This document shows positions 4,450-46,072 of a stretch of 64,000 bases of DNA, piece by piece (the first letter of the stretch is position 1; each line of letters begins with the position of its first letter). Made by a program: the position numbers and the translations under genes. The DNA comes from Dendrobates tinctorius. Its lineage: Eukaryota. The DNA is taken from contig NW_027361825.1 in the NCBI RefSeq assembly GCF_039654945.1, positions 29,698,001 to 29,762,000 on the forward strand, in the 5' to 3' direction. Under the pieces are notes generated by a model. The model had not been told where the DNA came from and made no database searches. It saw nothing but the letters and a program-made list of their open reading frames with translations.

Positions 4450-6066
4450 CACTACCATTCAAATGTTTGGGGTAACCCAGACAATTCTGTGTTGTCCATG
4501 AAAACTAATACTTTTATTAATCAAATGAGTTGCCAAATTAATTTAAAATCTAGTCCAGACATTGACAAGGTTCAAAAAAAAATTTATATTTGAAATAATA
4601 ATTTTCTCCTTCAAATTTTGCTTTCGTCAAAGAATTCTCCCTTTGCAGCAATTACAGCATTGCAGTCCTTTGGCATTCCAGCAGTTAATTTGCCGAGGTA
4701 ATGTGGAGAAATTTCACCCCATGCTTCAAGAAGCCCCTCCCACAAGTTGGTTTGGCTTGATGGGCACATTTTGCTTACCATACTGTCAAGCTGCTCCCAC
4801 AACAGCTCAATGGGGATGAGATCTGGTGATGGCGCTGCCCACTCCATTACAGATAGAATACCAGCTGCCTGATTATTACCTATATAGTTCTTGCATAATT
4901 TGGAGGTGTGCTTTGGGTCATTGTCCTGTTGTAGAATGAAATTTGCTCCCATCAAGCGCTGTCCACAGGGTGTGGCATGGCATTTCAAAATGGAGTGATA
5001 GCCTTCCTTATTCAAAATCCCTTTTACCTTGTACAAATCTCCCACTTTACCAGCACCAAAGCAACCCCAGACCATCACATTATCTTCACCATGCTTGACA
5101 GATGGCGTTAGGCACTCTTCCAGCATCTTTCAGTTGTTCTGCATCTCACAAATGTTTTTCTGTGTGGTCCAAACACCTCAAACTTGGATTCGTCTGTCCA
5201 TAACAGATTTTTCCAATCTTCCTCTGTCCAATGTCTGTGTTCTTTTGCCCATATTAATCTTTTCCTTTTATTAGCCTGTCTCAGAAAAGGCTTTTTCTTT
5301 GCCACTCTGCCCTGAAGGCCAGCATCCCGGAGTCGCCTCTTCACTGTAGAAGTTGACACTGGCATTTTTTTTGTGTACTATTTAATGAAGCTGTCAGTTG
5401 AGGAACTGTGAGGCATCGATTTCTCAAACTGCAGACTCTAATGTACTTGTCTTGTTGCTCAGTTGTGCAGCGGAACCTCACACTTCTCTTTCTACTCTGG
5501 TTAGAGCCTGTTTGTGTTCCCATCTGAAGGTAGTAGTACACATCGTTGTAGGAAATCTTCAGTTTCTTTGCAATTTCTCGCATGGAATAGCCTTCATTTC
5601 AAAGAACAAGATAAGACTGTTGAGTTTCACATGAAAGTCCTTTTTTTCTGGCTATTTTGAGAGTTTAATGGAACCAACAAATGTAATGCTCCAGATTCTC
5701 AACTAGCTCAAAGGGAGGTCAGGTTTATAGCTTCTCTAATCAGCCAAACTGTTTTCAGCTGTGCTAACATACTTGCACAAGGGATTTCAAGTGTATTCTA
5801 ACTATCCATTAACCTTCTTACACAGTTAGCAAACACAAAGTACCATAAGAACACTGGAGTAATGGTTGTTGGAAATGGGCCTCTATACACCTATGAATAT
5901 ATTGCATTGCAAACCAGACGTTTGCAGCTAGAATAGTCATTTACCACATTAAAAATGTATAGAGTATATTTCTGAATCATTTAGTGTTAGCTTCTTTGGA
6001 AAAAGTGTGCTTTTCTTTCTAAAATAAGGAGATTTCTAAGTGACCCTAAACTTTTCAATGCTATTG
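4450..6066 (-). mobile_element. Full-length frameshifted Tc1 (DD34E) transposon, unit 1 only
   Basis: TA duplication and imperfect TIRs; ORF pieces 5583-5341, 5365-5108, 5126-4611 with HTH (REIAKKLKIS), WTDESKF, QQDNDPKH and SPDLIPIELLW. The empty site TTCTTATATCTCT is present in units 2-4. Confidence 0.93.
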
Positions 6067-6199
6067 TATATCTCTAGTTATTTCTGAGTGGGGTTGTATA
6101 TAAATCAACATGCACTTTTTAACAAGTTGTCAAACAAAGCTTAACTTTTTGAGAACAGTATAATACATGAACTCAAACTTTTTTACATAAAAATATAAT

Positions 6200-6300
6200 T
6201 TTATTCAGCAGAAAATTAAAATAGAAATAAATACAATAACTTAAATTAATAATTATATATGTAATAAAATAAATATTAATAAATATATATTTCAAATTCT
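6200..6300 (-). promoter_or_regulatory. AU-rich 3'UTR block and AATAAA of A1 (repeated in the other A copies)
   Basis: Several ATTTA motifs on the minus strand followed by AATAAA at 6205-6200; typical of unstable cytokine mRNAs. Confidence 0.6.
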
Positions 6301-6577
6301 AAAAACATTTCTATAGTATCCATATTTAAGAAAGTTCATAGAGGGATATTCTTCTTGATTCTGAGGTTGTATTTTGAAGCTCCTCGACAGGTGACTGAAA
6401 ATCCACTTGTAGTGTGAACTTATTGGTTGCATCATGTATTTTCTTTACCAGTTCTTCACAATGATCATTAATCATTGGAGAAAGGGAAGGGAATTATTGA
6501 TGATTTGCATAGGACATGTTTCACTATTTGAAGAACATATTGTAGATTTATGTTTTTCATTTGAAGCTTCTTTGTAG

Positions 6578-8256
6578 TTACTTCCCAAGAGCCCAGCACC
6601 CAATATCTTCCACGACTAATGGGATGAGACTGTGTAACACAGCCTCCTGGAGACATTGTCGAGATGCCTACAAAATAATATGTAATGTGATTAACATGCA
6701 TGTTGAGAATTCACCAGTAACAAAAAATATTGTCTTCCTGTTATCTCCTCTGTCTGCCTTCTAAGGGTTTATTCTTCCTTTTTGTCTTGTCTATGTAGAA
6801 CAGATTATTGTAAAAATGATCCTCTCTAGACATGAGCAGGACCTCATTGACTGTTTATGTACAGGGTCACTTATCTACTCCAGTATGGAGGACAGGATCA
6901 CACATCTACTTGTTACCAAAAGAAACTTACCTCTTCCATAAAGTGGTGGAGATGGTGAAGCCATGGCTTCAGATTCTCGGAAGGTGTTTTACTGTGTCCT
7001 GGTGATTCTCTCTGAATACAAGATATACAAGATGGTTATAAGTTATGGGTATTTGCACAAAAAACATAAAAGCATGAACTACGAAAATAACAAAGATAAA
7101 GAGGGGACCATATGGACTTACACAGAGCAGAAGATCATCTCTGATTGTGAGGAACATCCCGAGTGACTGTGATGCCAGGTCGGGTACAGCAGATGTGGAC
7201 AGATTTGCAAGAACTTCTGTAGTTATTGTAACTTGCTCCAAGGTCAGAATCAGACGATCACTGGCCTGAAGAAAGAAATAAGAAAAATATGTGTCTAAGA
7301 ATGGTTCCTCAAGTATATTAGGATGTAAGAACATTTTATTTCACAGAACATTTATGAAAGAAAGGGGTGTACAGTACAATAGAAGATAATGCCAGATATG
7401 TACTTACCATTAGGTCACATACAGATGGCTTGTGTCTCACCATTCTTCTATAGCATTTGATTGCACTGTTTGACATGTTCTTCTCCTGTGGACAGATTGA
7501 GCAGAATTTGTTGAAGCTTTACATAATATTAAGTACACTGAATTTAAATAAAGTCATCCAGAATATCTTTCTATGTAGTGTGACTATTAAACAGAAGTCA
7601 GGAACCCACCCCATCATAAATGCTTTTTCTCATCATGGACTAGACCAATGACAGTACCAATTACTTAATTTACCTACCCTACCACAATATTAAAAACCTT
7701 CATATATTATAAATTCTTAATTGAAAAGAGGAGATCAATTTCTTTACAGATTTGTATTGCAAGGTGCTTTCACATTGCCTCTGTCTTCACAATCAACAGT
7801 CCCATTAGGGCTTGTATCCGACCTCCACTGAAAAACGGGATTCAACTGAAGACTAAAATGGTGTCGGAAGAGCGAATATGAGCTCTATAGTGCATAATTT
7901 TTGGACGTATACACCTAATGGAGGTGGATACTCAGACATAGTAGACTGTGTCTGGGTGTCCTCTGCTCGTTTTGAGGAGGGATTCAAACGCATGCCCCAA
8001 TGGGACCCATGATCATGAAGATAAGCACAAAGTGAAAGCAACCTTAGTTTCTGACTTCTGACTCTATAGATGTAAAACTAGAAAAAAAATAATATAAAAC
8101 AATTTCCCTCCCTACATGTTCATTCTGCAGTTGCTTGATGACCCTGATGTCAGCAGAAGATACTGATTGATGTCTTGCCATGGGGCAGCGTCTCTTGTGT
8201 GGATGTCCGGTCACTGCTACAAGAACAATGCTGAAGATCACCAATCTGATGTCCAT
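6578..8256 (-). CDS. ifnl: Type III interferon (IFN-lambda), copy A1, intact, 177 aa
   Basis: Exons 8256-8116, 7485-7408, 7265-7122, 7011-6931, 6667-6578, all GT-AG and phase 0. Product: MDIRLVIFSIVLVAVTG-HPHKRRCPMARHQSVSSADIRVIKQLQNEH/EKNMSNSAIKCYRRMVRHKPSVCDLM/ASDRLILTLEQVTITTEVLANLSTSAVPDLASQSLGMFLTIRDDLLLC/RESPGHSKTPSENLKPWLHHLHHFMEE/ASRQCLQEAVLHSLIPLVVEDIGCWALGK*. The signal peptide, the WLHHL motif and the SxxCLxxxVxxxLxxLxxxDxxCxA motif match IFN-lambda helices E/F. Confidence 0.93.
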
Positions 8257-9044
8257 GGCTAGAGTATTTGTGGGGACGTGGAGAATTTATTCTCTTTCTA
8301 TGATTCTGTGTATATAATAATAAAACATAGAACATGATTCTTGCACATAAACTCATCATGCAAATGTCCAAGGTGTTGCTCTACTACATGTACGAAAAAA
8401 GAAAAGACAACACTTAAAGATATGTACATATCATGTAATATATTCCCCTGACGAAGCTGTGCGCGACTTAGCGATACGCATGGGGCCCTCTTTTGCATCC
8501 CTCATGATTGATACAGCACCCCTCCTGGGCTTTTGTATATGTGCCAGCAGGTATACTGTCGTGGGGTCCTACTCTGGTATGACACAATCAGCAGAGCGAG
8601 AGATGAGTGAACAGTCCCAAAAGCCTTTATTACATGCAAACCGAAAGGTCCATAAAACAAACCACAACACAGTGGATAAAATAGTCTAGGAGTAGAGATA
8701 GGGTCTAGTAATGGGATAAATGCCCCAGGGAATGAGAGTCACAATCCTCCTCTTAGAGATCGATATGACTCCAGATATTCTCCGTATAGGCTCCTCTAGC
8801 AGTATTTCTAGGGCAATCCAGGATTCTCCAAGTCTCTCTGGGGTGCTGGTCGTAGCCTCAGCACCCCACATAGAATCTATCTTGCTTGTCTCTCCCCTCA
8901 GAAGGAGAGAAAAATTATCTTTAAATTCTGTTTCAGGTCATCCTCCACATGTCAGGGGGAGGTGGCAGGGGCTCATCTCACATTGTTTGAGAAGTTAATC
9001 AATATACATAGTTTGTCCTTGCTCTGCAGGCCAACAATCCATAG

Positions 9045-9455
9045 ATACAGTCCCTTGTAACAGTAAGAAATGCAAAACCTGCACCCACATATCACCAACA
9101 GATAAAGTCTCCATACTCAACACAAATCAGGACTATAAGATCATGGACTCTTTTTCATGCACATCCTCCAATGTAGTGTACATGATACAGTGTACAAGGT
9201 GCAATACAGGGACATACATCGGGGAAACTAAGCAAAAACTACAAACAAGGATGAATCTGCATGGACACACTAATAAAAATGAGCTGGACACACCTCTAGG
9301 GATACACTTCTCTAGACCTGGACACAGCTTGGCAGATCTAAAAGTCCTAATATTGAAAGGTCATTTTAATAGTGACAGAGAAAGAAAAATCTGGGAGTTC
9401 AAATTTATAATTATGTTTCAATCTCTAACCATAGGACTCAATTTCACACCTGAAT
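9045..9455 (+). mobile_element. Penelope GIY-YIG endonuclease fragment, unit 1 only
   Basis: PCNSKKCKTC followed by FSCTSSNVVYMIQCTRC..YIGETKQKLQTRMNLH..HF..GLN; replaces a ~300-bp segment present in units 2-4. Confidence 0.85.
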
Positions 9456-10429
9456 GATATCCCACACAACAAATCACAACATCACATAAACTTGATCCTC
9501 CTTCACTATATGCTTTAACATCGTGCTTCCATGCCATCTCTCTCTTTACTCTGAGACTCATACCATGGGCTTCTCTATCTTTGTTCTCTAAAGCCATTTT
9601 GCTTTAGCTGTTTTGTCATAATGCTTTCATATATACTTATCTCTGTCAGCTTATATTACAACATGTACTTTATTGGTGTATACTTGATATGGTCCTCATG
9701 TGGTCCTCGTATATCATCTCCCGGACAAATTAAATAGATGGCACCATACATTGGAGGAATTCACTGATTTTTGATATTCCCTTGAGTATTACCCTTCGGA
9801 TTGTACCTTTCTTCTCCATTGGGGGGGATTTATATGCACACATATGGACCTTTTTCCACATATGTAGTCTAGATGCATATGGTATACATTTCATTAGAAA
9901 AATGTACTGGTATTACAGAAATATATATTCTTCGGAACCATCATTGGGGTTCCGGTTGCCATATTTGTCCTATTGGCTGGATAAATCTACCTTCAAATAG
10001 TGATTGATGTGCAATGCTGCATACTGAACTGGCGTATTATTGCCTGGAGTTTGCTTATAGTGTACTGATGGTTTTAAATGTCTTTTAGTTCTCAATAGAC
10101 TTTTTTTTATACTAGATGATATTTAGGTATGCATATCTTCATGTGCTGTGTTTTCCTTTTCTATTATTGCCATTTCCTCTCTCCACATGGTATAGCACCC
10201 TTTTGCTATCTGTTACTTGACTAGTGGTGCATCCTCTCCCCTCCTCCATGCTGTTCTGCATATACACCAAATAAAAGATGCTCACCTGTCCGGTTGACTT
10301 GCGTCTCTCTGGTGCTCTCAGCTCTGTTTCTGGTCTTCCCATGTTTATTCTTTTATATTTCATTCTCATGGAGAAATTTTCTTTCTACGTTCTGAATTGA
10401 ATTGACATGAGAAAAGTGTCTACAGCTGT

Positions 10430-10763
10430 GGGAAAATCTATCAACTTTCAGTTTCCATAGTATGTAGGTAGGAATGTAACGTCAGGTAACTGGGAGGAGA
10501 CTCTTCCACTACTACAGGTGACTGGAGGAATCCCTGCTATATACAGAGATATTACATATAACAGCATGAGGAAGTTACTGAGTGATGGGAGGATAGATGA
10601 CATAAACAGTCGAATAATCTGTTTTACATTGTTAAACGTAATATCTTTGCATACAACAGGGATTCCTCCAGTCACCTGTAGTAGTGGAGAAGTCTCCTCC
10701 CACTTACCTGACGTTATCTTCCTTGCTACATACCAAGGAAACTGAAAGTTGTAAGGATTTCCC
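10430..10763. promoter_or_regulatory. Palindromic candidate bidirectional enhancer with mirrored kB, IRF/ISRE and CRE-like sites (unit 1)
   Basis: GGGAAAATCT 10430-10439, ACTTTCAGTTTCC 10444-10456 and TAACGTCA in the left arm; mirrored TGACGTTA, GGAAACTGAAAGT 10737-10749 and AGGATTTCCC 10754-10763 in the right arm. Arms ~135 bp. TATA-like TATAAAA ~10945 and TATATAAAA ~10984 lie upstream of B1. Function is inferred. Confidence 0.75.
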
Positions 10764-11078
10764 ATGACTTCTGTCACTTGAATTCTAATCGCAGAGCGAA
10801 GTTTTCTCCACATCCTGAAAATGAAGAAATTTCTCTCCTGCAGATTGAAGCATAGAAGGAGAAACATGGAGAGACAAAAGTCAGAGCTCAATGCAGCAGG
10901 TAGACGCCGCTCAAACGGGCAGGTGAGCTTTTTCTGGATGCTTGTATAAAATATTAGTGCTGTGGACGTCTACATGATAAGTTTATATAAAATAATAATG
11001 TTCTATGCATGTATATATCTTACACACAGATCCTTTGGAAGATCAGAAAGTCTCCAGATCAGCCCACATACTCCAGCC

Positions 11079-12907
11079 ATGGAAATCAGATTGGTGGTCT
11101 TCAGTCTTGTGCTTGTTGTAGTGACCAGACATCCACACCGGAGACGCTGCCCCTGTCCAGATATCAATCAGTATCTTCTGCTAACATGAGGATGATCAAA
11201 CAACTGCAGAATGAACATGTAAGAAGGCAGACTGTTTTATATATTTTTTGTAGATGCACATCTATAGAGTCAGAAGTCAGGGTGCTTTCACATGTGTTTT
11301 TTTACAAGTGAAGAACCACAGCAAGTGTAAAAGACAATTAATCTAATCTTTTCCATTATGTTTTACTTGAGAACTTTTGGTGGTACAATTGCAGGGTAAA
11401 GTGATTAATTGACTAGTGCTACTGTTGATCTGGTACATGATGAGATGATCCATTTATGGTTGGTTCTTGACTTTTTGACTCACTCTATACAGTAGACATC
11501 AATTATTACACTGTAAGGAAGTATATTCTGGATGAGTTAATTTACAATATACTATATACATGTACAGTACATCTAAAACAAATCCTGCTTTATCTATCAA
11601 CAGGAGAAGACCATGTCCACCAATGTAACCAAATGTTACAGAAGAATGGTGAGACACAAGCCATCTGCATGTGACCTAAAGGTAAATACAGATCTTTCAC
11701 TTTATTCCATTATTGGGCTTGAAATAGTTCTTGAAAATAAAACCCAAATTACCTAGTCATATATTTAGATGCACCTAACAGTTTCCTCATATTCACTTCT
11801 ACAGACCAGTGACCATCTGATTTTGACACTGGAGCGAGTTAGGGTCTGTGCACATGCTGCGGATTCTGCTGCGGATCCGCAGCGGAATTGGCCCTTCGGA
11901 TCTGCAGCAGTTTCTGCTGTGTTGTACAGTACCCTTTTAATCTATGCAAAATGAAAACCGCAGTGCACACGTTGCGGAATTTTCCACGCGGATTTGCTGC
12001 AGTTTTAAATCCGCAGCATGTCACTTCTTTGTGCAGGTTCCGCTGCGGTTTGGCACCTGCTCCATGAAAGGTGTCAAACCGCAGGGGAAAACCGCAGGTT
12101 AATCCGCAGAAAATCCTCAGATAAACCGCAGGTCTTTTGACCTGTGGATTTACCTGCGGATTCAGACAAATCCGCACGGAAAATTCCGCAGCAGAATCCG
12201 CAAAGTGTGCACACACCCTCACTGTAACTACAGAAGTTCTGACGAATCTGTCCACATCTGCTGTACGTGACCTGGCATCGCAGTCACTGGGGAAGTTTCT
12301 CATAACCAGAGAAGATCTTTTGATCTGTGTAGGTTCATATGGTCCTCCTGTTCATTGACTGCATGGATTGTGCTTTTATGTTTCGTTGCTGATATTGGAA
12401 ATATTGATTCATAACTAATCATTATCTTGCATTTTTCACATTCAGAAAGAATCACTAGGACACAGTAAAACACCTTCTGATGAGCTGAAGCCATGGCTGC
12501 ACCATCTCCAGCTCTTTATAGAAGACGTAAGTGTCCTACACTAATCTACAGATGTACTAATATCCCTGTCTTTTCTTGGTGGAGGAGATAATTGACACTT
12601 GACTTGAACAGTAGATGAGGGTCAACCTTGACTCGAGCGACCCAATAATGTTCTGAATGGAGACTAAAGTTGATGACATTATACAACTGAATATCAACAG
12701 AACATAAATGCAAGAACGAACCCAATGGTATATAGTCTAGGAGAAATTGTAGGCAATGCAGAATCCATAACATGCATAATAAACGTTTTTCATATTATTT
12801 TGTAGGAATCTTTGCAATGACTCCAGGGAGTAGTGCTACTGAGTGTTATCTCGCTAGTGGTAGAAGTTATTGGATATTGAGCTCATGCGAAGAAACTAAA
12901 TATGTAA
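11079..12907 (+). pseudogene. ifnl: IFN-lambda pseudogene B1
   Basis: Exons 11079-11218 (140 nt, 1-bp deletion at CCC-TGTCC), 11604-11681, 11805-12328 (MITE inside), 12446-12526, 12806-12907 (TGT>TGA and TGG>TGA). Confidence 0.9.
11842..12218. mobile_element. PIF/Harbinger-like MITE in B1 exon 3
   Basis: TIR GGGTCTGTGCACA...TGTGCACACACCC; 3-bp TSD TTA/TCA; internal GCGGA/TCCGC repeats. The empty site GAGTTACTGTAAC is seen in B4. Confidence 0.85.
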
Positions 12908-13360
12908 TTTATATTTATTTGCATTCTAGTTTTCTGTTCTAAAAATTATAACTTTAATAAAAGCAAATTAATTTACCTATTGTTCGTAAAATTATCTGAA
13001 AAAGAAAAGCTGTGATTGAGAAGTGGTTAAGAAGTCAAAGTTAAATTGAGATGATTCCAGAGATTTTGCAGGAGGAGATGTGTGTATGGGAGAAAAAGCA
13101 ATTCTATGGTGTATGCTGAATTCCAGATGGCAGCCGAATAGTGGTTTTGACAAAGTAGGACAAACCCAGTAAAGTACCAAAGGATTCTGCTGCGGCTCTT
13201 AGATACCCGCTGTTTACCTTGGATACCAGCTCCCAGCGTCGCTGATCGTGCAGGCACGTCCTGGGCCATTTTTTGATCGTTGGTCTCTCGCTGTCACATG
13301 TAGCTATGCGCGTTGGCCAGCGGGAGACCAACAATCAAAAAATGGCCCAGGACGTTCCTG

Positions 13361-16300
13361 TGTAAGGAAGGTGACCTGATGGATGGACGGACTAGTCAGA
13401 GTGAGGAAGGAAAGGTTTGCACAGTGTAGGTAGGTGTCAGTTATTACAGTGGGGAAACAGCTAGGAAAGTGTAGTGGACGCGCAGTACCTTGGGTTGACC
13501 ATTAGATGGCAGGGAGGAGTGTGAGCAAAGGACTTGACAACAGCTTAGGGCTTTAGAAACCGTTGGTCATGGGGGCGTGGTTACAGTGACAGGGGATCGG
13601 GAGAGCTATAAATACTGAGGGAGGATTCCCGAATGTTCCAGTCCCCAGGGGGAGCTCCAGTGATAGGAGGACTGTGACAGTCTGTGCGCTGTGAGGAGAA
13701 TCTAAACCAGGGGGACTAAGGAGAGAGAACGTCAGGGGGGTGGTCCTGACAGGAAGAACCGCAGAAGGGACGAGGCACTGGGTGTGAGACACCGTATTTG
13801 ACACGACGACTGATCAGTGGAAGCGCTATTGGTTTACGGGCCTAAGGCGGCCACAGTGATGGACCTGTCAGGAGCGTCGACGAGCGAAGAGGGAACGGTG
13901 TATGCATACACGTCCCCAGTGTAACGTACGGTGTGTGAGAAGCGGCCCTGGAAATGGAGGGCCGTGAGGTAAAGAAAGTGCGGTGTGCTCTGAGGCCGTC
14001 AGACGGACGGCGAATTAAATAAACTTGGACCTGTTGCACCCAGAATCTGCCTCCATCTTGTCTCTGTTTTTATCTCTGCGCAGTAAGAAGAGGGATCACC
14101 CCCCTGCTTGGCCCACCGACCCTACATTTGGAGTAGTCGGCAAGATCGCCGCCGCTAATACGCTATCTTCTGCGGCAGGCCTGCGTCTGAAGGACTGAGA
14201 AAAACTTGGGCTGCTCTATTTTGGATTATAAACGTCTGTGGATTACAACTGGCTTACCTGTGGATTGCAAATTGGGAGCGCTGTGGTGTCTCCGTGGTGC
14301 TGACAGAAGATCCGGGGTGGTGCCAGGTGCTGCGCAAGATGGCGGCATGGCTACAACGCAGGGGAGAGGTCCGAGTGTTTACAGTCGTGTTGAATGGACT
14401 GGGGCCCCCTCCAACGTACCCCGGTGGACAGCAGTATGTGCCCGGAGGCTGACGTTCCCATGTACTGGACCCTGGCAGATGGGTGGAAAGGCCTGCCGAT
14501 GCCCCACCCCACAGAGGGAGTGACCCCAAGGGAAAGCTGGGGTGCGGCTGCTTGGCGCCATTTGATTGCTGCCCACCGGACAGTATGAGACGCTACGGGT
14601 GTCGGGGCATCTGCCGCCTGGAGTGGCGATGGCGGCGAGAGAATGGACTGCGCCAGAACACGTCATTCTCGGGTCCCTGGACAAGAAGCGGAGCTGGTGC
14701 GGAGCCCGTGCGGAGCCAGAAGGAGCGGCCGCCATTGATACCGGCGGAGAACTTCCCCATGGAGCTCCTGAGCCTGGAGGCTAGGCCCGCTGAACACCGA
14801 GTTGGAGAGCGGAGACTGCGGGAGGAGCCACGTGGTGACGTGACGGAGACCGCGGCGCTGGGGAAGGTGAGAATTCCCCCGGCTCTGCTGGCAGCTTCCT
14901 AAGCGGCCCCTATCATTCTGCCACAGCAAGCAGTCTCCGGCGTACCGGAAGGTCTGGCTGCAGAGGGCCCTATGGTATATGCGGAGTTGAGCGAGGCCCC
15001 TGCCCCCGTCCCTGAGCCATCCCGCCTGGAGTCACCAGGGCGGAGCTCGTTTGCAGAAGACATGGCTGTGCTCCCTCGGCCGGAAAAAACTCCATCACCA
15101 GTACCGGCCGTCACTCCGGCTCTGCTGGAAGTTTTGGATGCGGCCTACCCTGCGGCCGTGGTTATGCCAGTGTTAGAACCAGCTGCGCCCTGTTTGACAG
15201 GCCTTGTGACTCCAGCCCTCAAAGACCCGGCTGTCCCCATTTGCCACCTGGCCCCAGTGGCTGGTGGGCCGCAGATATCATCGGCCACCTCTGCCCCACA
15301 CGCTTTTACAGCGAAGTCCCGCCCATCGGACTCTGGGACTGGCACAGCACCCTCCGTTCAGGTCGCGGAGGTGATCAAACAGAAGAAAGTTCAGTAGCAG
15401 GAGGTATGGAGCCTGCTCCACTCAAAGGGGGAGGCTGGCATGGCAGTGCAGAGATCACGGGGACGGCTGGTATACACCAACGTCGACAGGGGGTACGGCT
15501 TCATCCGTGACACGACCGCCCAGAGGGTATATGTGAATGTGGCCTCCATACGGCATGGTCAGGCGCTTAAGGAAGGGGACTTGGTTTCCTACTATAAAGA
15601 CTACTGCCCCCGCGGGTATTATGTGGTGGCAGTGCTAGCGGAGCCCGAAGGAAGCGAACCCCCGTAAAGAGGACTTGAATGGACACCCTCAGTATTCCCA
15701 GAACTCCACAGCTGTGGGGTCCCTCACTACTGACCACTAGAAGGTTGATTGAACTGTCAGGAGTTCGTAGCAGCGTTGTGCAGGTTATAATAACAGTTGC
15801 GTTTAAAAAAAAAATGTTTTTGTTGTTGTTTATCTGATGCAACTATTTTTTCTCTCTTTCTTTCTTCTTTCTATGTTCCTTGTATGGAAAGTATACCTAA
15901 ATATGTTTGCCTGACAGAACGGGGATACAGAAAAGCGGAGGAGTGTCCAGGTCCAAGGAAGGGGGAGGACGAAAGGGGATCTGCAATGTTATGTTGCTAT
16001 ATGTTGGTTTTAAAATGAGCAAAAGAAAATGAAAAAAAAAAATATAAAAATGGGTACTTGTGCTATTATAAAGTTGTTTAATGTATAATATGCCAAAGTA
16101 AAATGCAACAGGTCCGGGTAAGGGAAAGTCTGCGGGACCAAAGGAAAGTGTGAGATCCGGTAGGGATCTAAGAGTTGAGGAGGTCTGGGAGACCGGGACG
16201 CCGACCATGATATGTAATTGAAAGAAGGGTAAATGAGTTGGAAGACGTGAGAGAGACAGCCGTCCTAGGTCAGGTCCCCAACAACACGGACACCCCTGAA

Positions 16301-21564: not shown

Positions 21565-23569
21565 GGCTAAAGTATTTGTGGAGATCTGGAGAATTTATTC
21601 TCTTCCTATGAATCTGTGTATACAATAATAAAACATAGAACATGATTCTTGCACATAAACTCATCATGCAAATGTCCTCTTTTACATATACGAAAAAAAA
21701 AAAGACAATACTTAAAGATATGCACATATCATATATTATATTCCCCTGACAAAACTGTGCGCGTCACAGGCTCACAGCGATATGCATGGGGCCCTTTTTT
21801 ACATCCCCCATGATTGATACAGCACCCCTCCTGGGCTTTTGTATATGTGCCAGCAGGTATACTGTCGCGGGGTCCTACTCTGGTATCACACAGAGCGAGA
21901 AATGAGTGAACAGTCCCAAGAAACTTTATTAAATCAAAACCGAAAGGTCCATAAAACAATCGACAACACAGTGGATAAAATAGTCCAGGAGTACTAGTAA
22001 TGGGATAAATGCCCCAGGGAATGAGATTCACAATCCTCCTCTTAGAGATCCATATGGCAGTCCAGCTCCAGATACATCTCCAGATAGGCTCCTCTAGCAG
22101 TATTTCTAGAGCAATCCAGGTTTCTCCAAGTCTCTCTGGAGTTCTGGTTGTAGCCTCAGCATCCCACATAGGATCTATTTTACTTTTCTCTCCCCTCAGA
22201 AGGAGAGAAATATTCTCTTTTTACCCACATTTCTGTTACAGGTCATCCTCCACAGGTCAGGGGGAGGTGGCAGGGGTTCATGTCACATTGTTTGAGAAGT
22301 TAATCAATATGCATAGTCTGTCCTTGCTCTGCAGGTCAACAATCCATAGGGAACCTCACAATAGTCAATCAACATATTATCAGACATTGTTCAATGATCT
22401 TGCCTCCCTGTCTTGCAAAGACAGTAGACAATACCCTATAGGAGCTGATGTAAGAGGCAAGCAGCAGCCATTAAAAAATATCAAGAGTAAACATTTAAAA
22501 CTCAAATGACAGTAGTCTATGGTTCTTCATCTACTAAAAAAAAGACATCAGGATAATTAACATTAAATTATGTTTTGTCACATTAGAGGGAATACATAGA
22601 ATAATACAGAACAACGAGACAACACCCCTAAAATCAGTAAAGATATGACCACAGACAGAATGATATCCCACACACCAAATCACAACATCACATATAACTT
22701 GATCCTCCTTCACTATATTCTTTAACATCGTGCTTCCGTGGTATCTCTCTCTTTACTCTGAGACTCATACCATGGGCTTCTACTTCTTTGTTCTCTAAAG
22801 CCATTTTGCTTTAGCTGTTTTGTCATAGTGCTTTCATATATACTTATCTCTGTCAGCTTATATTACCACACGTACTTTATTGGTGTATACTTGATATGGT
22901 CCTCCTATATCATCTCCCGGACACATTAAATAGATGGCGCCATATATTGGAGGAATTTACTGTTTTTTTGGTATTCCCTTGAATATTAACCTTCAGGTTG
23001 TACCTTTGTTCTCCATTGGAGGGGATTTCTATGCACACATATGGACCTTTTTCCACATATGTAGTCTACATGCATATGGTATACATTTCATTAGAAAAAT
23101 GTGTTGTTGGTATAACAGAAATATATATTCTTCGGAAACATCATTGGGGTTCCGGTTACCATGTTTGTCCTATTGGCTGGATAAATCTACCTACAAATAG
23201 TGATCGATGTGCAATGCTGCATATTGAATTGGCATATTATTGCCTGGGGTTTGCTATGATATTTAGGTATGCATATCTTCATGTGCTGTCTTTTCCTTTT
23301 CTCTTATTGCCATTTCCTCTCTCCACATGGTATAGCACCCTTTTGCTATCTGTTACTTTACTAGTGGTGCATCCTCTCCCCTCCTCCATGCTGTTCTGCA
23401 TATACACCAAATAAAAGATGCTCACCTGTCCGGTTGACTTGTGTCTCTCTGCTGCTCTCAGCTCTGTTTCTTGTCTTCCCATGTTTCTCCTTTTATATTT
23501 CATTCTCATGGAGAAATTTTCTTTCTATGTTCTGAATTGAAATGACATGAGAAAATTGTCTACAGCTGT

Positions 23570-23903
23570 GGGAAAATCTATCAACTTTCAGTTTCCTTAG
23601 TATGTAGGTAGGAATGTAACATCAGGTAACTGGGAGGAGACTCTTCCACTACTACACGTGACTGGAGGAATCCCTGCTGTATACAGAGATATTACATATA
23701 ACAGCATGAGGAAGTTACTGAGTGATGGGAGGATAGATGACATAAACAGTCGAATAATCTGTTTTACATTGTTAAACGTAATATCTTTGCATACAGCAGG
23801 GATTCCTCCAGTCACCTGTAGTAGTGGAAGAGTCTCCTCCCAGTTACCTGACGTTATCTTCCCAGCTACATACCAAGGAAAGTGAAAGTTGTAAGGATTT
23901 CCC
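23570..23903. promoter_or_regulatory. Palindromic enhancer, unit 2
   Basis: Same structure as unit 1; right-arm IRF site is GGAAAGTGAAAGT. Confidence 0.75.
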
Positions 23904-24227
23904 ATGACTTCTGTCACTTGAATTCTAATCGCAGAGCAAAGTTTTCTCCACATCCTGAAAAAGAAGAAATTTCTCTATTGTTACTTTACATTGAAGCAAA
24001 AAAGGAGAAATATGGGAATATAAAAGTCAGAGCTCAAAGCAGCAGGTAGACGCAACACAAATGGGCAGGTGAGCTTCTTCTTCTGGATACTTGTATAAAA
24101 TATTAGTGCTGTGGACGTCTATATGATAAGTTTATATAAAATAATAATGTTCTATGCATGTATATATCTTACACGCAGATCCATTGGAAGATAAGAAAGT
24201 CTCCAGATCAGCCCCCATACTCCAGCC

Positions 24228-33115: not shown

Positions 33116-33304
33116 CTCCTCCATGCTGTTCTGCATATACACCAAATAAAAGATGCTCACCTGTCCGGTTGACTTGCGTCTCTCTGGTGCTCTCAGCTCT
33201 GTTTCTTGTCTTCCCATGTTTCTCCTTTTATATTTCATTCTCATGGAGAAATTTTCTTTCTACGTTCTGAATTGAAATGACATGAGAAAAGTGTCTACAG
33301 CTGT

Positions 33305-33638
33305 GGGAAAATCTATCAACTTTCAGTTTCCTTAGTATGTAGGTAGGAATGTAACATCAGGTAACTGGGAGGAGACTCTTCCACTACTACAGGTGACTGG
33401 AGGAATCCCTGCTGTATACAGAGATATTACATATAACAGCATGAGGAAGTTACTGAGAGATGGGAGGATAGATGACATAAACAGTCGAATAATCTGTTTT
33501 ACATTGTTAAACGTAATATCTTTGCATATAGTAGGGATTCCTCCAGTCACCTGTAGTAGTGGAGAAGTCTCCTCCCACTTACCTGACGTTATCTTCCCAG
33601 CTACATACCAAGGAAACTGAAAGCTGTAAGGATTTCCC
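33305..33638. promoter_or_regulatory. Palindromic enhancer, unit 3
   Basis: Same structure as unit 1; sites retained. Confidence 0.75.
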
Positions 33639-33962
33639 ATGACTTCTGTCACTTGAATTCTAATCGCAAAGCGGAGTTTTCTCCTTATCCTGAAAATGAA
33701 GAAATTTCTCTCCTGTTACTTTACATTGAAGCAAAAAAGGAGAAACATGGGAATACAAAAGTCAGAGCTCAAAGCAGCAGGGAGACGCAACACAAATGGG
33801 CAGGTGAGCTTCTTCTTCTGGATGCTTGTATAAAATATTAGTGCTGTGGACGTCTACATGATAAGTTTATGTAAAATAATTATGTTCTATGCATGTATAT
33901 ATCTTACACACTGATCCTTTGGAAGATCAGAAAGTCTCCAGATCAGTCCCAATACTCCAGCC

Positions 33963-40902: not shown

Positions 40903-42906
40903 GGCTAAAGTATTTGTGGAGACCTGGAGAATTTATTCTCTTCCTATGAATCTGTGTATACAATAATAAAACATAGAACATGATTCTTGCACATAAACTC
41001 ATCATGCAAATGTCCTCTTCTACATATACGAAAAAAAAAAAAGACAATACTTAAAGATATGCACATATCATATATTATATTCCCCTGACAAAGCTGTGCG
41101 CGTCACAGGCTCACAGCGATATGCATGGGGCCCTTTTTGGCATCCCCTATGATTGATACAGGACCCCTCCTGGGCTTTTGTATATGTGCCAGCAGGTATA
41201 CTGTCGCAGGGTCCTACTCTGGTATCACACAGAGCGAGAGATGAGTGAACAGTCCCAAGAACCATTATTACATGCAAACCGAAAGGTCCATAAAACAATC
41301 CACAACACAGTGGATAAAATAGTCCAGGAGTACTAGTAATGGGATAAATGCCCCAGGGAATGAGAGTCACAATCCTCCTCTTAGAGATCCATATGGCAAT
41401 CTAGCTCCAGATACATCTCCAGATAGGCTCCACTAGCAGTATTTCTAGGGAAATCCAGGTTTCTCCAAGTCTCTCTGGGGTGCTGGTCGTAGCCTCAGCA
41501 TCCCACATAGGATCTATCTTACTTGTCTCTCTCCTCAGAAGGAGAGAAATATTCTCTTTATACCCACATTTCTGTTACAGGTCATTCTCCACAGGTCAGG
41601 GGGAGGTGGCAGGGGTTCATGTCACATTGTTTGAGAAGTTAATCAATATGCATAGTTTGTCCTTGCTCTGCAGGTCAACAATCCATAGGGAACCACACAA
41701 TAGTCAATCAACATATTATCAGACATTGTTCAATGATCTTGCCTCCCTGTCTTGCAAAGACAGTAGACAATACCCTATAGGAGATGATGTAAGAGGCAAG
41801 CGGCAGCCATTAAAAAATATCAAGAATAAACTTTTAAAACTCAAATGACAGCAGTCTATGGTTCTTCATCTACTGAAAAAAGACGTCAGGATAATTAACA
41901 TTAAATTATGTGTCGTCACATTAGAGGGAATACATAGAATAATGCAGAACAACGAGGCAACACCCCTAAAATCAGTAAAGATATGATCACAGACAGAATG
42001 ATATCCCACACACCAAATCACAACATCATATATAACTTGATCCTCCTTCACTATATGCTTTAACATCGTGCTTCCATGGCATCTCTCTCTTTACTCTGAG
42101 ACTCATACCATGGGCTTCTACTTCTTTGTTCTCTAAAGAAATTCTGCTTTAGCTATTTTGTCATAATGATTTCATATATACTTATTTCTATCAGCTTATA
42201 TTACAACATGTACTTTATTGGTGTATACTTGTTATGGTCCTCCTATATGATCTCCCGGACACATTAAATAGATGGCGCCATATATTGGAGGAATTTACTG
42301 TTTTTTTGGTATTCCCTTGAGTATTACCCTTCGGATTGTACCTTTCTTCTCCATTGGGGGGATTTCTATGCACACATATGGACCTTTTTCCACATATGTA
42401 GTCTAGATGCATATGGTATACATTTCATTAGAAAAATGTATTGTTGGTATAACAGAAATATATATTCTTCGGTAACAACATTGGGGTTCCGGTTACCATG
42501 TTTGTCCTATTGGCTGGATAAATCTACCTTCAAATAATGATCGATGTGCAATGCTGCATATTGAATTGGCATATTATTGCCTGGGGTTTGCTATGATATT
42601 TAGGTATGCATATCTTCATGTGCTGTCTTTTCCTTTTCTCTTATTGCCATTTCCTCTCTCCACATGATATAGCACCATTTTTCTATATGTTACTTGACTG
42701 GTGGTGCATCCTCTCCCCTCCTCCATGCTGTTCTGCATATACACCAAATAAAAGATGCTCACCTGTCCGGTTGACTTGCGTCTCTCTGGTGCTCTCAGCT
42801 CTGTTTCTTGTCTTCCCATGTTTCTCCTTTTATATTTCATTCTCATGGAGAAATTTTCTTTCTATGTTCTGAATTGAAATGACATGAGAAAAGTGTCTAC
42901 AGCTGT

Positions 42907-43240
42907 GGGAAAATCTATCAACTTTCAGTTTCCTTAGTATGTAGGTAGGAATGTAACTTCAGGTAACTGGGAGGAGACTCTTCCACTACTACAGGTGACT
43001 GGAGGAATCCCTGCTGTATACAGAGATATTACATATAACAGCATGAGGAAATTACTGAGTGATGGGAGGATAGATGACATAAACAGTCGAATAATCTGTT
43101 TTACATTGTTAAACGTAATATCTTTGCATATAGTAGGGATTCCTCCAGTCACCTGTAGTAGTGGAGGAGTCTCCTCCCACTTACCTGACGTTATCTTCAT
43201 AGCTACATACTAAAGAAACTGAAAGCTGTAAGGATTTCCC
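42907..43240. promoter_or_regulatory. Palindromic enhancer, unit 4
   Basis: Same structure as unit 1; right-arm IRF site is AGAAACTGAAAG. Confidence 0.75.
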
Positions 43241-46072
43241 ATGACTTCTGTCACTTGAATTCTAATCGCAGAGCGAAGCTTTCTCCACATCCTGAAAATG
43301 AAGAAATTTCTCTCCTGTTACTTTACATTGAAGCAAAAAAGGAGAAACATGAGAATACAAAAGTCAGAGCTCAAAGCAGCAGGTAGACGCAACACAAATG
43401 GGCAGGTGAGCTTCTTCTTCTGGATGCTTGTATAAAATATTAATGCTGTTTACGTCTACATGATAAGTTTATATAAAATAATAATGTTCTATGCATGTAT
43501 ATATCTTACACACTGATCCTTTGGAAGATAAGAAAGTCTCCAGACCAGCCCCAATAAGCCAGCCATGGAAATCAGATTGGTGGTCTTCAGTCTTACTTGC
43601 CGCAGTCACCGGACGTCCACACCGGAGACACTGCCCCATGTCCATATATGAATCAGTATCTTCTGGTAACATGAGGATGATCAAACAACTGCAGAATGAA
43701 CATGTAAGAAGGGAGACTGTTTTATATATTTTTTGTAGATGCACATCTATAGAGTCAGAAGTCAGGGTGCTTTGACATGTGTTTTGTTACAAGTGAAGAA
43801 CCACAACAAGTGTAAAAGACAATTAATCTAATCTTTTCCATTATGTTTTACTTGATAACTTTTGGTGGTACAATTGTAGGTTAAATTGATTAATTGATTA
43901 GTACTACTGTTGATCTGGTACATGATGAGATGATCCATTTATGGTTGGTTCTTGACGTTTTGACTCACTCTATACAGTAGACATCAATTATTACACTGTA
44001 CGGAAGTATATTCTGCATGAGTTAATTTATAATATTCTATATACATGTACAGTACATCTAAAACAAAACCTGCTTTATCTGTCAACAAGAGAAGACCATA
44101 TCCACCAGTGCAATCAAATGTTACAGAAGAATGATGAGACACAAGCCATCTGTATGTGACCTAAAGGTAAATGCAGATCTGTCACTTTATTCCATTACTG
44201 GCCTTGAAATAGTTCTTGAAAGTAAAACCCAACTTACCTAGTCAGATATTTAGATGCACCTAATAGTTCCCTCTTCTTCACTTCTACAGACCAATGACCA
44301 TCTCATTCTGACACTGGAGCGAGTTACTGTAACTACAGAAATTCTGACAAATCTGTCCACATCTGTTGTACGTGACCTGGCATCATAGTCACTCGGGATG
44401 TTCCTCAAAATCAGAGAAGACCTTTTGATCTGTGTAAGTTCATATGGTCCTCCTGTTCATTGACAGCATGGATTGTGCTTTTATGTTTCTTTGCTGATAT
44501 TGGAAATATTGATTCATAACTAATCATTATCTTGCATTTTTCACATTCAGAAAGAATCACTAGGACACAGTAAAACACTTTCTGATGAGCTAAAGCCATG
44601 GCTGCATCATCTCCAGCACTTTATAGAAGAGGTAAGTGTCCTACACTACCGTAATCTACAGATGCACTAATATCATCCCGTCTTTTCTTGAAGGAGGAAA
44701 TACCATAATTGACACTGGACTTGAACAATAGATGAGGGTTAACCTTGACTTGAGCGACCCCATAATGTTCTGAATGGAGACTAAAGTTGATGACATTATA
44801 CAACTGAATATCAACAGAACAAAGATGCAAGAAAGAAGCCAATGTTATATAGTAATAAATAAACCTGATAGAAACTTGCCCTAATTAAATGTGTCTTGGT
44901 TAAATAAAGATATCTTATGAAGAAATCTATTACCTTTACTGAAGCTAAAAACTGGCGAGGCAGGGAAAAGGGTCTTCAGAATGCAGGGTGGATTTCCAGG
45001 TCCTTTCCCAATAATACTCCCCGACACAGGTATATAAAAAGTTACTGGAGCTAAAGGGTGCTACCTCCTAGCATGCCGCCGTCCCGGCCGGTGACTGGTG
45101 CGCAGCTGGAGGTGTATATCGGCAGGCTGTAAGAGTACCAGCCGCCGCTTGCAAAAGCAGGCATGCAAGGTCCAAAAAAGCTGAAGGACCTTGCGTGACG
45201 TCACAGTCACGTGATAGATCATGTGACAGGCAAGAAAGCCCTATGGGGCGCTGATGGGGCCAGAAAGCAATGGCAAATCCTACGCGTTGCGGAATTCACT
45301 GATTCCTTCCTCAGGGATGGCCCCCTAGAGCAAGAGGAACCCTTATATAGCCTCCAGTATATAGCAATGGAGCATTATACTATGCATTAAAAGCAAATAG
45401 CTCAATCTCGCTATTTAAACCGTTTGGGATCAGAGTATTCAATTCAAATATCCATTTACTTTCCACCCTGGACATCTGATGCATAAGATTACCTTTCCTG
45501 ATACTTCTTTTAACTATTTGAATCCCAGTCACTTTAGTGTCCCTTAGGGAGCTCCCATGATGTGTAAGATAATGATTAGAGAGGGGGTGTCCTGTGAATT
45601 TCTTACAAATATTCCGTAAATGTTCCCCAATTCTGACATTTAAGGGACGTATCGTTCGACCTATATATAATTTATCACATGGACATGTGATACAATATAT
45701 CACCCCCTTCGTGTCACAGGTGATAAAATCACGAATCTGAATCTCCATGGATTTATTTATAATAGAGAATTGTTTCTTACTGCCTAATTTTCTGCAAGAT
45801 ACACATTTTTTGCAGGGAAAAAAAGCTAATCCCACCCAAAATAGATATTCTCCTCTTGCAAGTACAGTTAACCATCCTTCTACTTCTAATAACAATCCCA
45901 ATCAATTACCCCCAGACCTCAATGAGGGTCCTCTTCTCACAAAAAATAAACCTAAAACTAAACAAAGCCATTTGCCGTTTTTTCAGGTGGGTCCAAAAAA
46001 ATATGGCAGAGGGGATGTAGGGGCGGGAAATTTACCAAAAAAAAGAATAAACAACAAATACCAGAGGATCAA

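What the first reader, a model, noticed from the sequence alone, without database searches (positions are those of the whole stretch)
10255..10950. Palindromic, IFN-beta-enhanceosome-like control element at the axis of each gene pair
Seen: ~135-bp inverted arms around ~10597. Each arm carries, reading outward, a kB-like GGGATTCCTC, TGACGTTA, GGAAACTGAAAGT and a kB-like site. Weaker mirror homology continues out to the TATA region (GGGCAGGTGAGC..TGTATAAAA versus CATATACA..GCTCACCTGTCC), so the A/B pair arose by fold-back duplication centred here. All four complete units keep the sites. Known: IFN-lambda promoters are driven by IRF and NF-kB, and the ATF-IRF-kB order recalls IFNB PRDIV-PRDIII/I-PRDII. 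Inference: the doubled enhancer, not the B protein, is what the inverted duplication contributed, and each live gene now has two enhancer modules.
Basis: partly seen in the sequence, partly recalled or inferred. Interest (0 to 1): 0.72.

Follow-up and report, generated by a model that had tools for sequence, protein, structure and literature searches.

The report
Mirror-image twin interferon-lambda promoter
The palindrome is two mirror-image copies of an ordinary frog interferon-lambda promoter, sitting between a head-to-head gene pair of the dyeing poison frog. It is old and shared with related frogs, and the copy beside the dead gene appears to be decaying rather than serving as a second enhancer.

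Summary
The inverted repeat is real. Its arms are 10414-10563 and 10630-10779 (150 nt, 83%), weaker homology runs out to 10275 and 10933, and it recurs at four tandem axes. It is not a mobile element.

It is the shared upstream region of a head-to-head pair of IFN-lambda-3-like genes of Dendrobates tinctorius. Gene A (minus strand) is intact in all four units; gene B (plus strand) is a pseudogene in all four.

Each arm is one copy of a promoter conserved across hyloid frogs (Hyla, Engystomops, Anomaloglossus, Phyllobates, Ranitomeya). The IRF site GGAAACTGAAAG is nearly invariant. The CRE-like site is not conserved, and no arm holds a strict NF-kB consensus.

- GGCAG|GTGAGC looks like the splice donor of a conserved leader exon.
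- TGTATAAAA lies in the following small intron.
- The conserved TATA (ATATAAAAG, 10350-10358) is intact toward A and decayed toward B.
- A's leader intron has grown to 1,980 nt through repeat insertion.

The fold-back predates the dendrobatid genera. Phyllobates keeps both genes, and Ranitomeya kept B and lost A. In both D. tinctorius and Ranitomeya the arm next to the dead gene varies about three times more among tandem copies, at the neutral level in D. tinctorius. That argues against a maintained doubled enhancer. No RNA or functional data were available.

The parts
10414..10563 (-). L arm core of unit 1, the enhancer part of gene A's promoter. It holds a kB-like/E-box block (10534-10512), GGAAGAGTCTCCTCC, TGACGTTA (10484), the IRF site (10456-10444) and a weakened kB-like AGATTTTCCC (10439).
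   Evidence: conserved in other frogs
10630..10779 (+). R arm core of unit 1, the enhancer part of pseudogene B's promoter. It carries the same blocks in mirror order (10659, 10671, 10686, 10709, 10737, 10754).
10564..10629 (.). Non-palindromic spacer. The L-type (ancestral) promoter continues to about 10592 by homology with Hyla, so the junction of the two copies lies within about 10593-10624.
10275..10413 (-). L arm outer part. It holds the conserved TATA box ATATAAAAG (10358-10350), a predicted TSS at about 10328, a predicted non-coding leader exon running to 10286, and a splice donor ACAG|GTGAGC (intron starts at 10285).
   Evidence: inferred from conservation; no RNA data
10780..10933 (+). 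R arm outer part. It holds the proximal IRF-like GAAAATGAAGAAA (10817; this block is deleted in L arms), a decayed TATA GCATAGAAGG (10850-10859), and a leader exon ending at 10922 with donor CAG|GTGAGC.
10923..11029 (+). The acceptor is ACACAG| at 11029.
8306..10285 (-). Predicted leader intron of A, expanded to 1,980 nt by about 1.86 kb of inserted sequence (~8397-10254). The insert includes a very high-copy repeat at 9024-9515.
6578..8256 (-). Gene A of unit 1, an intact five-exon IFN-lambda-3-like gene (exons 8256-8116, 7485-7408, 7265-7122, 7011-6931, 6667-6578). It matches protein P0001 of D. tinctorius.
11079..12900 (+). Pseudogene B of unit 1. It has a frameshift in exon 1, a 380-bp MITE-like insert in exon 3 (11841-12221) and stop codons in exon 5.
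23554..23919 (.). The same palindrome in unit 2 (axis ~23737).
33289..33654 (.). The same palindrome in unit 3 (axis ~33472).
42891..43256 (.). The same palindrome in unit 4 (axis ~43074).

Best explanation
The element is the shared intergenic region of a head-to-head pair of interferon-lambda (IFNL3-like, Pfam IL28A) genes of Dendrobates tinctorius. An old inverted duplication copied a whole gene with its ~450-bp promoter, and the two promoter copies now face away from each other around a ~30-60-nt junction. The pair was later amplified, or homogenised, as a ~10-13 kb tandem unit. Each arm is a complete promoter. From the axis outward it holds: a distal conserved block (GGGATTCCTCC-GTCACCTG-...-GGAGGAGTCTCCTCCCAGTTACCTG); a nearly invariant IRF element (GGAAACTGAAAG); a near-consensus kB-like site; a TATA box; and a short non-coding leader exon ending in a splice donor. 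By homology with mammalian IFNL promoters, virus sensing should activate IRF3/7 (with or without NF-kB), which bind the arm and fire transcription outward. That step is inferred, not shown. In this species only the minus-strand gene A is intact. Its leader intron absorbed ~1.9 kb of repeats, so its ATG lies 2.2-2.8 kb from the axis, yet it should still be driven from the L arm. The R arm now fronts a pseudogene and is drifting.
For: 1. The palindrome and four tandem copies are real. 2. The genes are IFN-lambda: exons 3-5 hit Pfam IL28A colinearly, and exon translations tile P0001 'interferon lambda-3-like [Dendrobates tinctorius]' across residues 1-177. 3. B is disabled in every unit. 4. The arm is homologous to the single upstream region of IFN-lambda genes in Hyla sarda and to the upstream regions in Engystomops, Anomaloglossus, Phyllobates and Ranitomeya, at a fixed distance from the ATG. 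5. The conserved TATA, the CAG|GTGAG donor and the AG acceptor are present in every species examined, including a 73-nt version in Bufo. 6. L arms and R arms of three dendrobatid genera form separate clades with 100/99 and 100/98 support. 7. Phyllobates L009 holds a compact pair, 1,009 nt from ATG to ATG, with both genes called intact. 8. The palindrome is not a high-copy repeat: DNA contigs of run X1 cover it at depth 6-9, like the flanks, against 7,000-21,000 for the repeat at 9024-9515. 9. Eight of the nine strict IRF-element matches in the 64-kb window lie in the arms.
Against: There is no transcript evidence. No RNA run holds the locus, so the TSS, the leader exon and its splicing are inferred from conservation alone. 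The putative leader intron is as conserved across families (0.81) as the leader exon (0.78), so there is no exon/intron contrast. No arm has a strict NF-kB consensus, and transcription-factor assignments rest on consensus strings recalled from knowledge, not on a matrix scan. Inducibility is untested.
Confidence: 0.8

Rival explanations
1. One reading: the palindrome works as one doubled, IFN-beta-enhanceosome-like enhancer. On this view the B-side arm is kept by selection as a second module that boosts the live gene A.
For: Both arms still carry the IRF element and most conserved blocks in all four units. The R arm keeps elements that the L arm has lost: a better kB-like site, and the 35-nt block with GAAAATGAAGAAA that is deleted in dendrobatid L arms. 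Over the long term the L-versus-R core differs by only 0.12-0.14 per site, against 0.37-0.38 in the outer arm. In Ranitomeya the arm on the dead side also still holds the motifs.
Against: Among tandem copies, the core of the dead-side arm is about 3 times more variable than the live-side core in both species (Dt 0.052 vs 0.017; Ri 0.044 vs 0.019). The Dt dead-side value equals the neutral benchmarks (B pseudogene 0.048, A introns 0.038). Segregating sites are 17/210 vs 6/209 in the core (p = 0.03) and 61/574 vs 24/587 over the whole arm (p = 2e-5). The CRE-like site is not conserved (Hyla has TGGAGTCT; 3 of 4 Dt L arms have lost it). There is a single IRF element and no strict kB site. Both genes were alive ancestrally, so the duplication first contributed a gene.
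Confidence: 0.2
2. The high L/R identity of the ~70-nt core comes mainly from arm-to-arm gene conversion within the palindrome, not from selection on binding sites.
For: Palindromes with short spacers are prone to intra-arm conversion (general knowledge). Unit 2's R arm shares three L-type states in the core, and both Dt arms share an A at CCAGTC where most other frogs have T.
Against: L and R arms are reciprocally monophyletic across three genera. Side-specific states are shared between species right next to the core. The same blocks are conserved in Hyla, whose promoters are not in a tight palindrome. Identity peaks at 10656-10715, not at the axis.
Confidence: 0.1
3. The palindrome is a fold-back transposon or MITE that landed between two genes.
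For: 150-nt inverted arms around a short spacer look like MITE terminal repeats.
Against: Within the 64-kb window the 24-nt core occurs only at the eight arms. Depth in DNA run X1 matches the flanks, while a real repeat nearby is about 1,000 times deeper. Mirror homology continues into the exons of both genes. Each arm is homologous to single IFN-lambda promoters of other frog families.
Confidence: 0.02

Closest known systems
Mammalian IFNL1 / IFNL3 promoters
   Same: Both lie upstream of an IL28A-family gene and carry an ISRE/PRDI-type IRF element plus kB-type sites. Reviews state that these promoters bind IRF1, IRF3, IRF7 and NF-kB (PMC5723907).
   Different: The frog arms hold only near-consensus kB sites and add frog-specific conserved blocks: three (C/T)ACCTG boxes and the palindromic GGAGGAGTCTCCTCC. 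They appear to have a leader exon and intron. Two copies stand back to back. No sequence homology to the mammalian promoters was tested.
Human IFNB1 enhanceosome (PRDIV-PRDIII/I-PRDII); from established knowledge, not re-examined here
   Same: The order is CRE-like, then IRF, then kB-like, within 55 nt (10709-10763) in the R arm.
   Different: The CRE-like site is not conserved. There is one two-GAAA IRF element instead of four overlapping sites. About 20 nt of unconserved spacer intervenes, there is no strict kB site, and the cluster lies roughly 100-160 nt from the predicted TSS rather than from -102 to -47.
In-silico promoter survey of Xenopus interferon genes (Sang et al. 2016, PMC4928184)
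   Same: It reports ISRE/PRDI elements in about half of frog IFN and IFNL promoters, with NF-kB elements in others.
   Different: That work scanned Xenopus promoters individually. It describes neither head-to-head pairs nor a palindromic promoter, and it includes no hyloid frogs.
Bidirectional promoters of head-to-head paralogue pairs made by inverted duplication (for example the human IFNL2/IFNL3 inverted segmental duplication; recalled from memory, and a paper search found nothing usable)
   Same: Mirror-image paralogues with their own promoter copies facing away from a common centre.
   Different: Here the two predicted start sites are only ~550 nt apart, so the promoters form a tight palindrome. 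The pair is also tandemly repeated, and one partner is lost in a lineage-specific way.

Membership tests
Vertebrate IFN-lambda virus-inducible promoter | Lies directly upstream of an IFN-lambda (IL28A family) gene | tested here: met
   Exons hit PF15177 colinearly. Gene A equals NCBI 'interferon lambda-3-like' P0001. The arm-to-ATG distance is conserved in other frogs.
Vertebrate IFN-lambda virus-inducible promoter | ISRE/PRDI-type IRF element | tested here: met
   All eight arms fit GAAANNGAAAS (8 of 9 window hits, expected 1.45). The element is nearly invariant across five frog families.
Vertebrate IFN-lambda virus-inducible promoter | NF-kB site(s) | tested here: inconclusive
   No strict GGGRNWYYCC occurs in any arm. 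One-mismatch sites (reverse-complement GGGAAATCCT; AGGAGTCTCC) are present and partly conserved. No matrix scan was available.
Vertebrate IFN-lambda virus-inducible promoter | Induction by virus or poly(I:C) | not testable with these tools
   No RNA run holds the locus.
IFN-beta-type enhanceosome | Conserved ATF-2/c-Jun (PRDIV-like) site | tested here: not met
   TGACGTTA is lost in the L arms of units 2-4. It is replaced by TGGAGTCT in Hyla and is variable in Anomaloglossus and Engystomops.
IFN-beta-type enhanceosome | Array of four overlapping IRF sites contiguous with the kB site | tested here: not met
   There is a single GAAACTGAAAG unit. The second IRF-like block lies about 70 nt further out and is deleted in L arms.
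IFN-beta-type enhanceosome | Consensus kB (PRDII-like) site | tested here: not met
   No strict match in the arms.
MITE / fold-back transposon | Dispersed, multi-copy distribution | tested here: not met
   Found only at the four axes in the window. Contig depth is 6-9, like the flanks, in DNA run X1, against 7,000-21,000 for a true repeat. This rests on one run of a close relative or the same species; no whole-genome search was possible.
Head-to-head paralogue pair with bidirectional promoter (inverted duplication) | Mirror homology continues from the promoter into both gene bodies | tested here: met
   Inverted matches cover exon 1 (8051-8370 vs 10963-11280, 80%), exon 2, exons 3-4 and exon 5.
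Head-to-head paralogue pair with bidirectional promoter (inverted duplication) | Both promoters active, with divergent start sites less than 1 kb apart | not testable with these tools
   Predicted start sites at ~10328 (-) and ~10880 (+) are inferred from TATA positions. No RNA data exist.

The most novel reading that the evidence does not exclude
The twin promoter is a functional unit rather than two independent promoters. Enhancer blocks on both arms would act on whichever gene of the pair survives. That would explain why either partner can be lost (A in Ranitomeya, B in Dendrobates, neither in one Phyllobates pair) while the palindrome persists. In D. tinctorius the R arm would then act as a shadow enhancer, making up for the L arm's weakened kB-like site and its deleted proximal IRF-like block.
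Probability: 0.2. Interest if true: 0.55.

Novelty: new variant of a known kind. Interest (0 to 1): 0.35.

Why it matters
The finding gives a clean, dated natural experiment on what happens to a cytokine promoter after an inverted gene duplication. The same palindromic pair can be compared in three states: both genes alive (Phyllobates), the left gene dead (Ranitomeya) and the right gene dead (Dendrobates). It also defines a conserved hyloid-frog IFN-lambda promoter (IRF element, E-box-like boxes, TATA, probable leader exon). That promoter can be used directly in reporter assays for amphibian antiviral responses to ranavirus. Finally, it corrects gene models that ignore the leader exon or start inside the promoter. 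It does not reveal a new regulatory principle.

Tried and rejected
- **RNA evidence.** The look-up of sequencing runs found no RNA holder. The three small 'RNA?' runs matched only dispersed repeats, so the TSS and splicing could not be checked.
- **Strict NF-kB consensus scan.** No hit in any arm.
- **Pfam scan of ORFs inside the inserted sequence** (9143-9457 and 8720-8998). No family at E <= 1. The 'YIGET' motif recalls the GIY-YIG nucleases of Penelope-like elements, but only from memory; this was not tested.
- **MITE hypothesis.** Rejected.
- **Target-site duplication.** The ~25-30-nt similarity between the L-arm end (10255-10285) and the sequence at 8396-8425 might be a target-site duplication of the insert. 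No poly-A tail sits in a consistent orientation, so this is left open.
- **Exon versus intron conservation.** I expected the leader exon to be more conserved than its intron; it is not (0.78 vs 0.81).
- **Constraint test between D. tinctorius and Ranitomeya.** Divergence of orthologous arms (0.08-0.10 in the core) is too close to the neutral ~0.12-0.15 to test constraint at that depth.
- **Paper search on the IFNL2/IFNL3 inverted duplication.** Nothing usable.
- **Earlier scan notes.** Searches for 'interferon' gave no note on this locus.
- **Spliced gene model.** It was searched exon by exon by reference only; the joined model was never submitted.
- **Searches not run.** A full-length protein search for ranoid or pipid relatives, and the large representative search, were left out because the family was already settled.
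Full report
**1. The observation**

The inverted repeat is real.
- The repeat finder reports arms 10414-10563 and 10630-10779 (150 nt, 83% complementary, 66 nt apart). A weaker outer pair lies at 10275-10385 / 10823-10933 (111 nt, 70%).
- BLAST of the region against the window aligns 10280-10928 with its own reverse complement over 671 nt (E 4e-79).
- As single-stranded DNA, 10414-10779 folds into one long hairpin at -108 kcal/mol. Shuffles average -36, giving z = -18.5.
- Sliding identity between the arms peaks at 0.97 (10656-10685) and stays at 0.80 or above to 10760. It drops to 0.27-0.47 at 10790-10845, then recovers to 0.67-0.73 over 10845-10931.

The 24-nt core and the IRF 13-mer recur only at four axes, about 10597, 23737, 33472 and 43074. 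Chance would give 0 and 0.2 matches.

One statement does not hold: not all sites are kept in all units.
- TGACGTTA has decayed at its CpG (TGATGTTA or TGAAGTTA) in the L arms of units 2-4.
- The IRF 13-mer differs by 1-2 bases in the R arms of units 2-4.
- Every L arm has the weaker AGATTTTCCC.

**2. The genes on either side**

The window holds four tandem units that are 91-95% alike, plus a truncated fifth copy.

On the minus strand each unit carries an intact five-exon gene, A. In unit 1 its exons are 8256-8116, 7485-7408, 7265-7122, 7011-6931 and 6667-6578.
- Exons 3, 4 and 5, searched one by one by reference, hit Pfam IL28A at colinear profile positions 55-101, 106-128 and 131-156.
- I searched with a stop-free ORF reference and scored exon 3 alone. 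This returned P0001, 'interferon lambda-3-like [Dendrobates tinctorius]', at 100% identity.
- tblastn of P0001 tiles all five exons across residues 1-177.
- The spliced model was never joined and submitted; only exon references and the database protein were used.

On the plus strand each unit carries gene B (ATG 11079 in unit 1). It is dead in every unit.
- Exon 1 has a frameshift in units 1 and 3, and its start is missing in unit 4.
- Exon 3 carries a 380-bp insert with 39-nt terminal inverted repeats in units 1-3.
- Stop codons lie in exon 3 or exon 5.
- In unit 4, 4.7 kb separate exon 4 from exon 5.

Mirror homology between A and B covers all exons.

**3. Each arm is an ordinary, conserved promoter**

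I fetched loci for related proteins from six other frog species: Phyllobates terribilis, Ranitomeya imitator, Anomaloglossus baeobatrachus, Hyla sarda, Bufo bufo and Engystomops pustulosus.
- The region 10200-11300 is colinear at 85-87% with three tandem copies in Ranitomeya.
- It is colinear with a compact Phyllobates pair.
- One arm's worth of sequence lies at 70-76% upstream of IFN-lambda genes in Hyla, Anomaloglossus and Engystomops, at the same distance from the ATG.

In the multi-species alignment the following blocks are conserved:
- G(G/A)GATTCCTCC-GTCACCTGTAGTAG.
- TGGAGGAGTCTCCTCCCAGTTACCTG, which contains a 7+7 palindrome in most species.
- AAGGAAACTGAAAG(T/C)TGTAAG, a nearly invariant IRF element.
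- A TTYCCCA half-site that reads as a one-mismatch kB site on the other strand.
- A proximal GAAAATGAAGAAATTTCTC block, which is deleted in dendrobatid L arms.
- The TATA region GAAATATAAAAGGAGAAACATGG.

The CRE-like TGACGT is only patchily present. Hyla has TGGAGTCT in its place.

A strict NF-kB consensus is absent from every arm. Eight of the nine strict GAAANNGAAAS matches in the whole window are in the arms.

Assigning the blocks to IRF, NF-kB or ZEB-type factors rests on consensus strings from general knowledge. Reviews report IRF1/3/7 and NF-kB sites in IFNL1 and IFNL3 promoters (PMC5723907). A Xenopus survey reports ISRE/PRDI elements in frog IFN promoters (PMC4928184).

**4. The 'TATA region' is mis-assigned**

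- The conserved TATA box lies about 72 nt upstream of the string GGCAG|GTGAGC.
- That string is conserved in all species as CAG|GTGAG. About 105 nt further on there is a conserved pyrimidine-rich ACACAG| or CATAG| acceptor, then about 50 nt of conserved 5'UTR and the ATG. In Bufo the spacing is 73 nt.
- The simplest reading is a short non-coding leader exon followed by a small intron.
In other frogs it reads TGTATATACAGAA.

In D. tinctorius the true TATA is intact in all four L arms (ATATAAAAG, 10358-10350 in unit 1). At the orthologous position in the R arms it has decayed to GCATAGAAGG or GCAAAAAAGG. The live B genes of Ranitomeya and Phyllobates keep AATAAAAGG and CATAAAAGG.

This reading also explains why gene A's ATG lies 2.2-2.8 kb from the axis.
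- Homology to the leader intron stops at about 10255 and resumes at about 8396.
- The predicted leader intron of A (10285 to 8306, 1,980 nt) therefore contains about 1.86 kb of inserted sequence.
- Part of that insert is a very high-copy repeat: depth 7,000-21,000 over 9024-9515 in DNA run X1, against 6-25 elsewhere.
- Part of it is shared with Ranitomeya at the same place.

Caveats:
- No RNA run holds the locus.
- The intron is as conserved as the leader exon (0.81 vs 0.78).
- The NCBI Ranitomeya model P0004 begins at an ATG only about 12 nt after the TATA and uses a GC donor. It is at best weak support.

**5. It is not a mobile element**

- The core occurs only at the eight arms in the window.
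- Contigs of DNA run X1 cover 10151-11002 at depths 5.9-9.4, like neighbouring low-copy sequence.
- Each arm is homologous to promoters of other frog families.

**6. Age and history**

- A maximum-likelihood tree of 27 arms places the L arms of Phyllobates, Ranitomeya and Dendrobates in one clade (100/99) and their R arms in another (100/98). The fold-back therefore predates these genera.
- Two Anomaloglossus arms join the R clade (88/92).
- The IRF-to-IRF spacing across the axis is 280-282 nt in Dendrobates, Ranitomeya and Anomaloglossus. The structure is therefore probably older than the split of Dendrobatidae from Aromobatidae.
- Engystomops also has a head-to-head pair (ATGs at 16358- and 17391+), but its arms cluster by species. 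It may be an independent event or the result of homogenisation.
- Units cluster by species on both sides, so the arrays were amplified or homogenised after the Dendrobates-Ranitomeya split.

The fate of the two genes differs by lineage.
- One Phyllobates pair has both genes called intact, only 1,009 nt from ATG to ATG.
- Ranitomeya keeps B (177- and 203-aa models) and retains only stop-bearing exon 2-3 remnants of A.
- D. tinctorius keeps A and has lost B.
- Anomaloglossus shows all three states within 21 kb.

**7. Is the second arm kept as an enhancer?**

Over the long term both cores were constrained. L and R differ by 0.12-0.14 per site in the core against 0.37-0.38 in the outer arm. Finding 92 or more matches in 105 positions has a probability of about 1e-7 at the outer-arm identity. 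That period includes the time when both genes were alive.

Diversity among the tandem copies tells a different recent story.

| Region | D. tinctorius | Ranitomeya |
|---|---|---|
| Core, live-gene side | 0.017 (L) | 0.019 (R) |
| Core, dead-gene side | 0.052 (R) | 0.044 (L) |
| A exons | 0.019 | not measured |
| A introns | 0.038 | not measured |
| B pseudogene body | 0.048 | not measured |

- Segregating sites in the core are 17/210 on dead sides against 6/209 on live sides (Fisher p = 0.03).
- Over the whole arm they are 61/574 against 24/587 (p = 2e-5).
- The two arms are adjacent, so unequal crossing-over should homogenise them equally. The difference therefore points to relaxed constraint on the arm beside the dead gene.

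- All R arms still fit the strict IRF pattern.
- They keep the better kB-like site.
- They keep the proximal IRF-like block that L arms lack.

The counts are small and the copies are not independent. I put the 'maintained second enhancer' reading at about 0.2.

**8. Comparison with known systems**

The element works like, and by position and content belongs to, the IRF-driven IFN-lambda promoters known from mammals. It fails three defining features of the IFN-beta enhanceosome: a conserved ATF site, a four-site IRF array and a consensus kB site.

What is new is the arrangement. A tight palindromic twin promoter has been conserved for the whole history of poison frogs, is tandemly repeated, and shows reciprocal loss of one partner. 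This is a new variant of a known kind and of moderate interest. It corrects the promoter anatomy and offers a natural experiment, but it reveals no new mechanism.

Noticed in passing
L002:5000-11700 versus window 6000-13000: Gene death is reciprocal. In Ranitomeya imitator the B-type (R-side) genes are intact and the A-type genes survive only as exon 2-3 remnants with a stop. In D. tinctorius the opposite holds. One Phyllobates pair (L009:7275-11718) keeps both genes.
   Followed up: yes
window 11841-12221: A 380-bp MITE-like insert with 39-nt terminal inverted repeats (11837-11875 / 12185-12223) and many internal TGCGGA-type inverted repeats splits exon 3 of pseudogene B in units 1-3. It is absent from unit 4 and from Ranitomeya.
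   Followed up: partly
window 9024-9515: A very high-copy dispersed repeat (contig depth 7,000-21,000 in DNA run X1, against about 10-25 nearby) lies inside gene A's expanded leader intron. The stretch 9044-9452 has no counterpart in the other three units. ORF 9143-9457 (+) has a YIGET motif that recalls GIY-YIG nucleases of Penelope-like elements (from memory only), but it has no Pfam hit.
   Followed up: partly
window 13360-17373: Direct repeats 13360-14126 and 16641-17373 (92%) flank an insertion that makes unit 1 about 3.4 kb longer than the others. This fits the LTR retroelement noted by another reader.
   Followed up: no
window 58867-60197: A fifth, truncated A-type copy has exons 3-5 only and an in-frame stop in exon 3 (…LILTLE*VTITT…). 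It has no promoter palindrome.
   Followed up: partly
window 55070-55515: A perfect palindromic kB site GGGAAATTCC (55505) lies 430 nt from an ISRE-like GAAAATGAAAC (55070). No recognisable gene is nearby. Long simple tandem repeats follow at about 55.7-57.2 kb.
   Followed up: no
L002:10001-10206: The NCBI model P0004 (203 aa) starts at an ATG about 12 nt after the TATA box, inside the promoter arm. It joins the normal start through a GC-type donor. The 26-residue N-terminal extension is probably an annotation artefact.
   Followed up: partly
L001:4930-9783 and L001:10141-38608: In one Phyllobates copy about 4.85 kb is inserted between the L-arm enhancer core and its TATA/leader exon. The gene model P0002 also joins exon 1 to exons 2-5 across 28 kb. 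This may be a chimeric model or a disrupted copy.
   Followed up: no
window 31755-32990: Unit 3 carries an extra tandem duplication of about 450 bp inside gene A's leader intron (31755-32534 followed by 32538-32990, both matching 9452-10242). This explains why its ATG-to-axis distance is longer, at 2.8 kb.
   Followed up: no
L008:16209-17540: Engystomops pustulosus also has a head-to-head IFN-lambda pair with mirror-image promoters. Its arms group by species in the tree, so inverted duplication of this gene may have happened more than once in hyloid frogs.
   Followed up: partly
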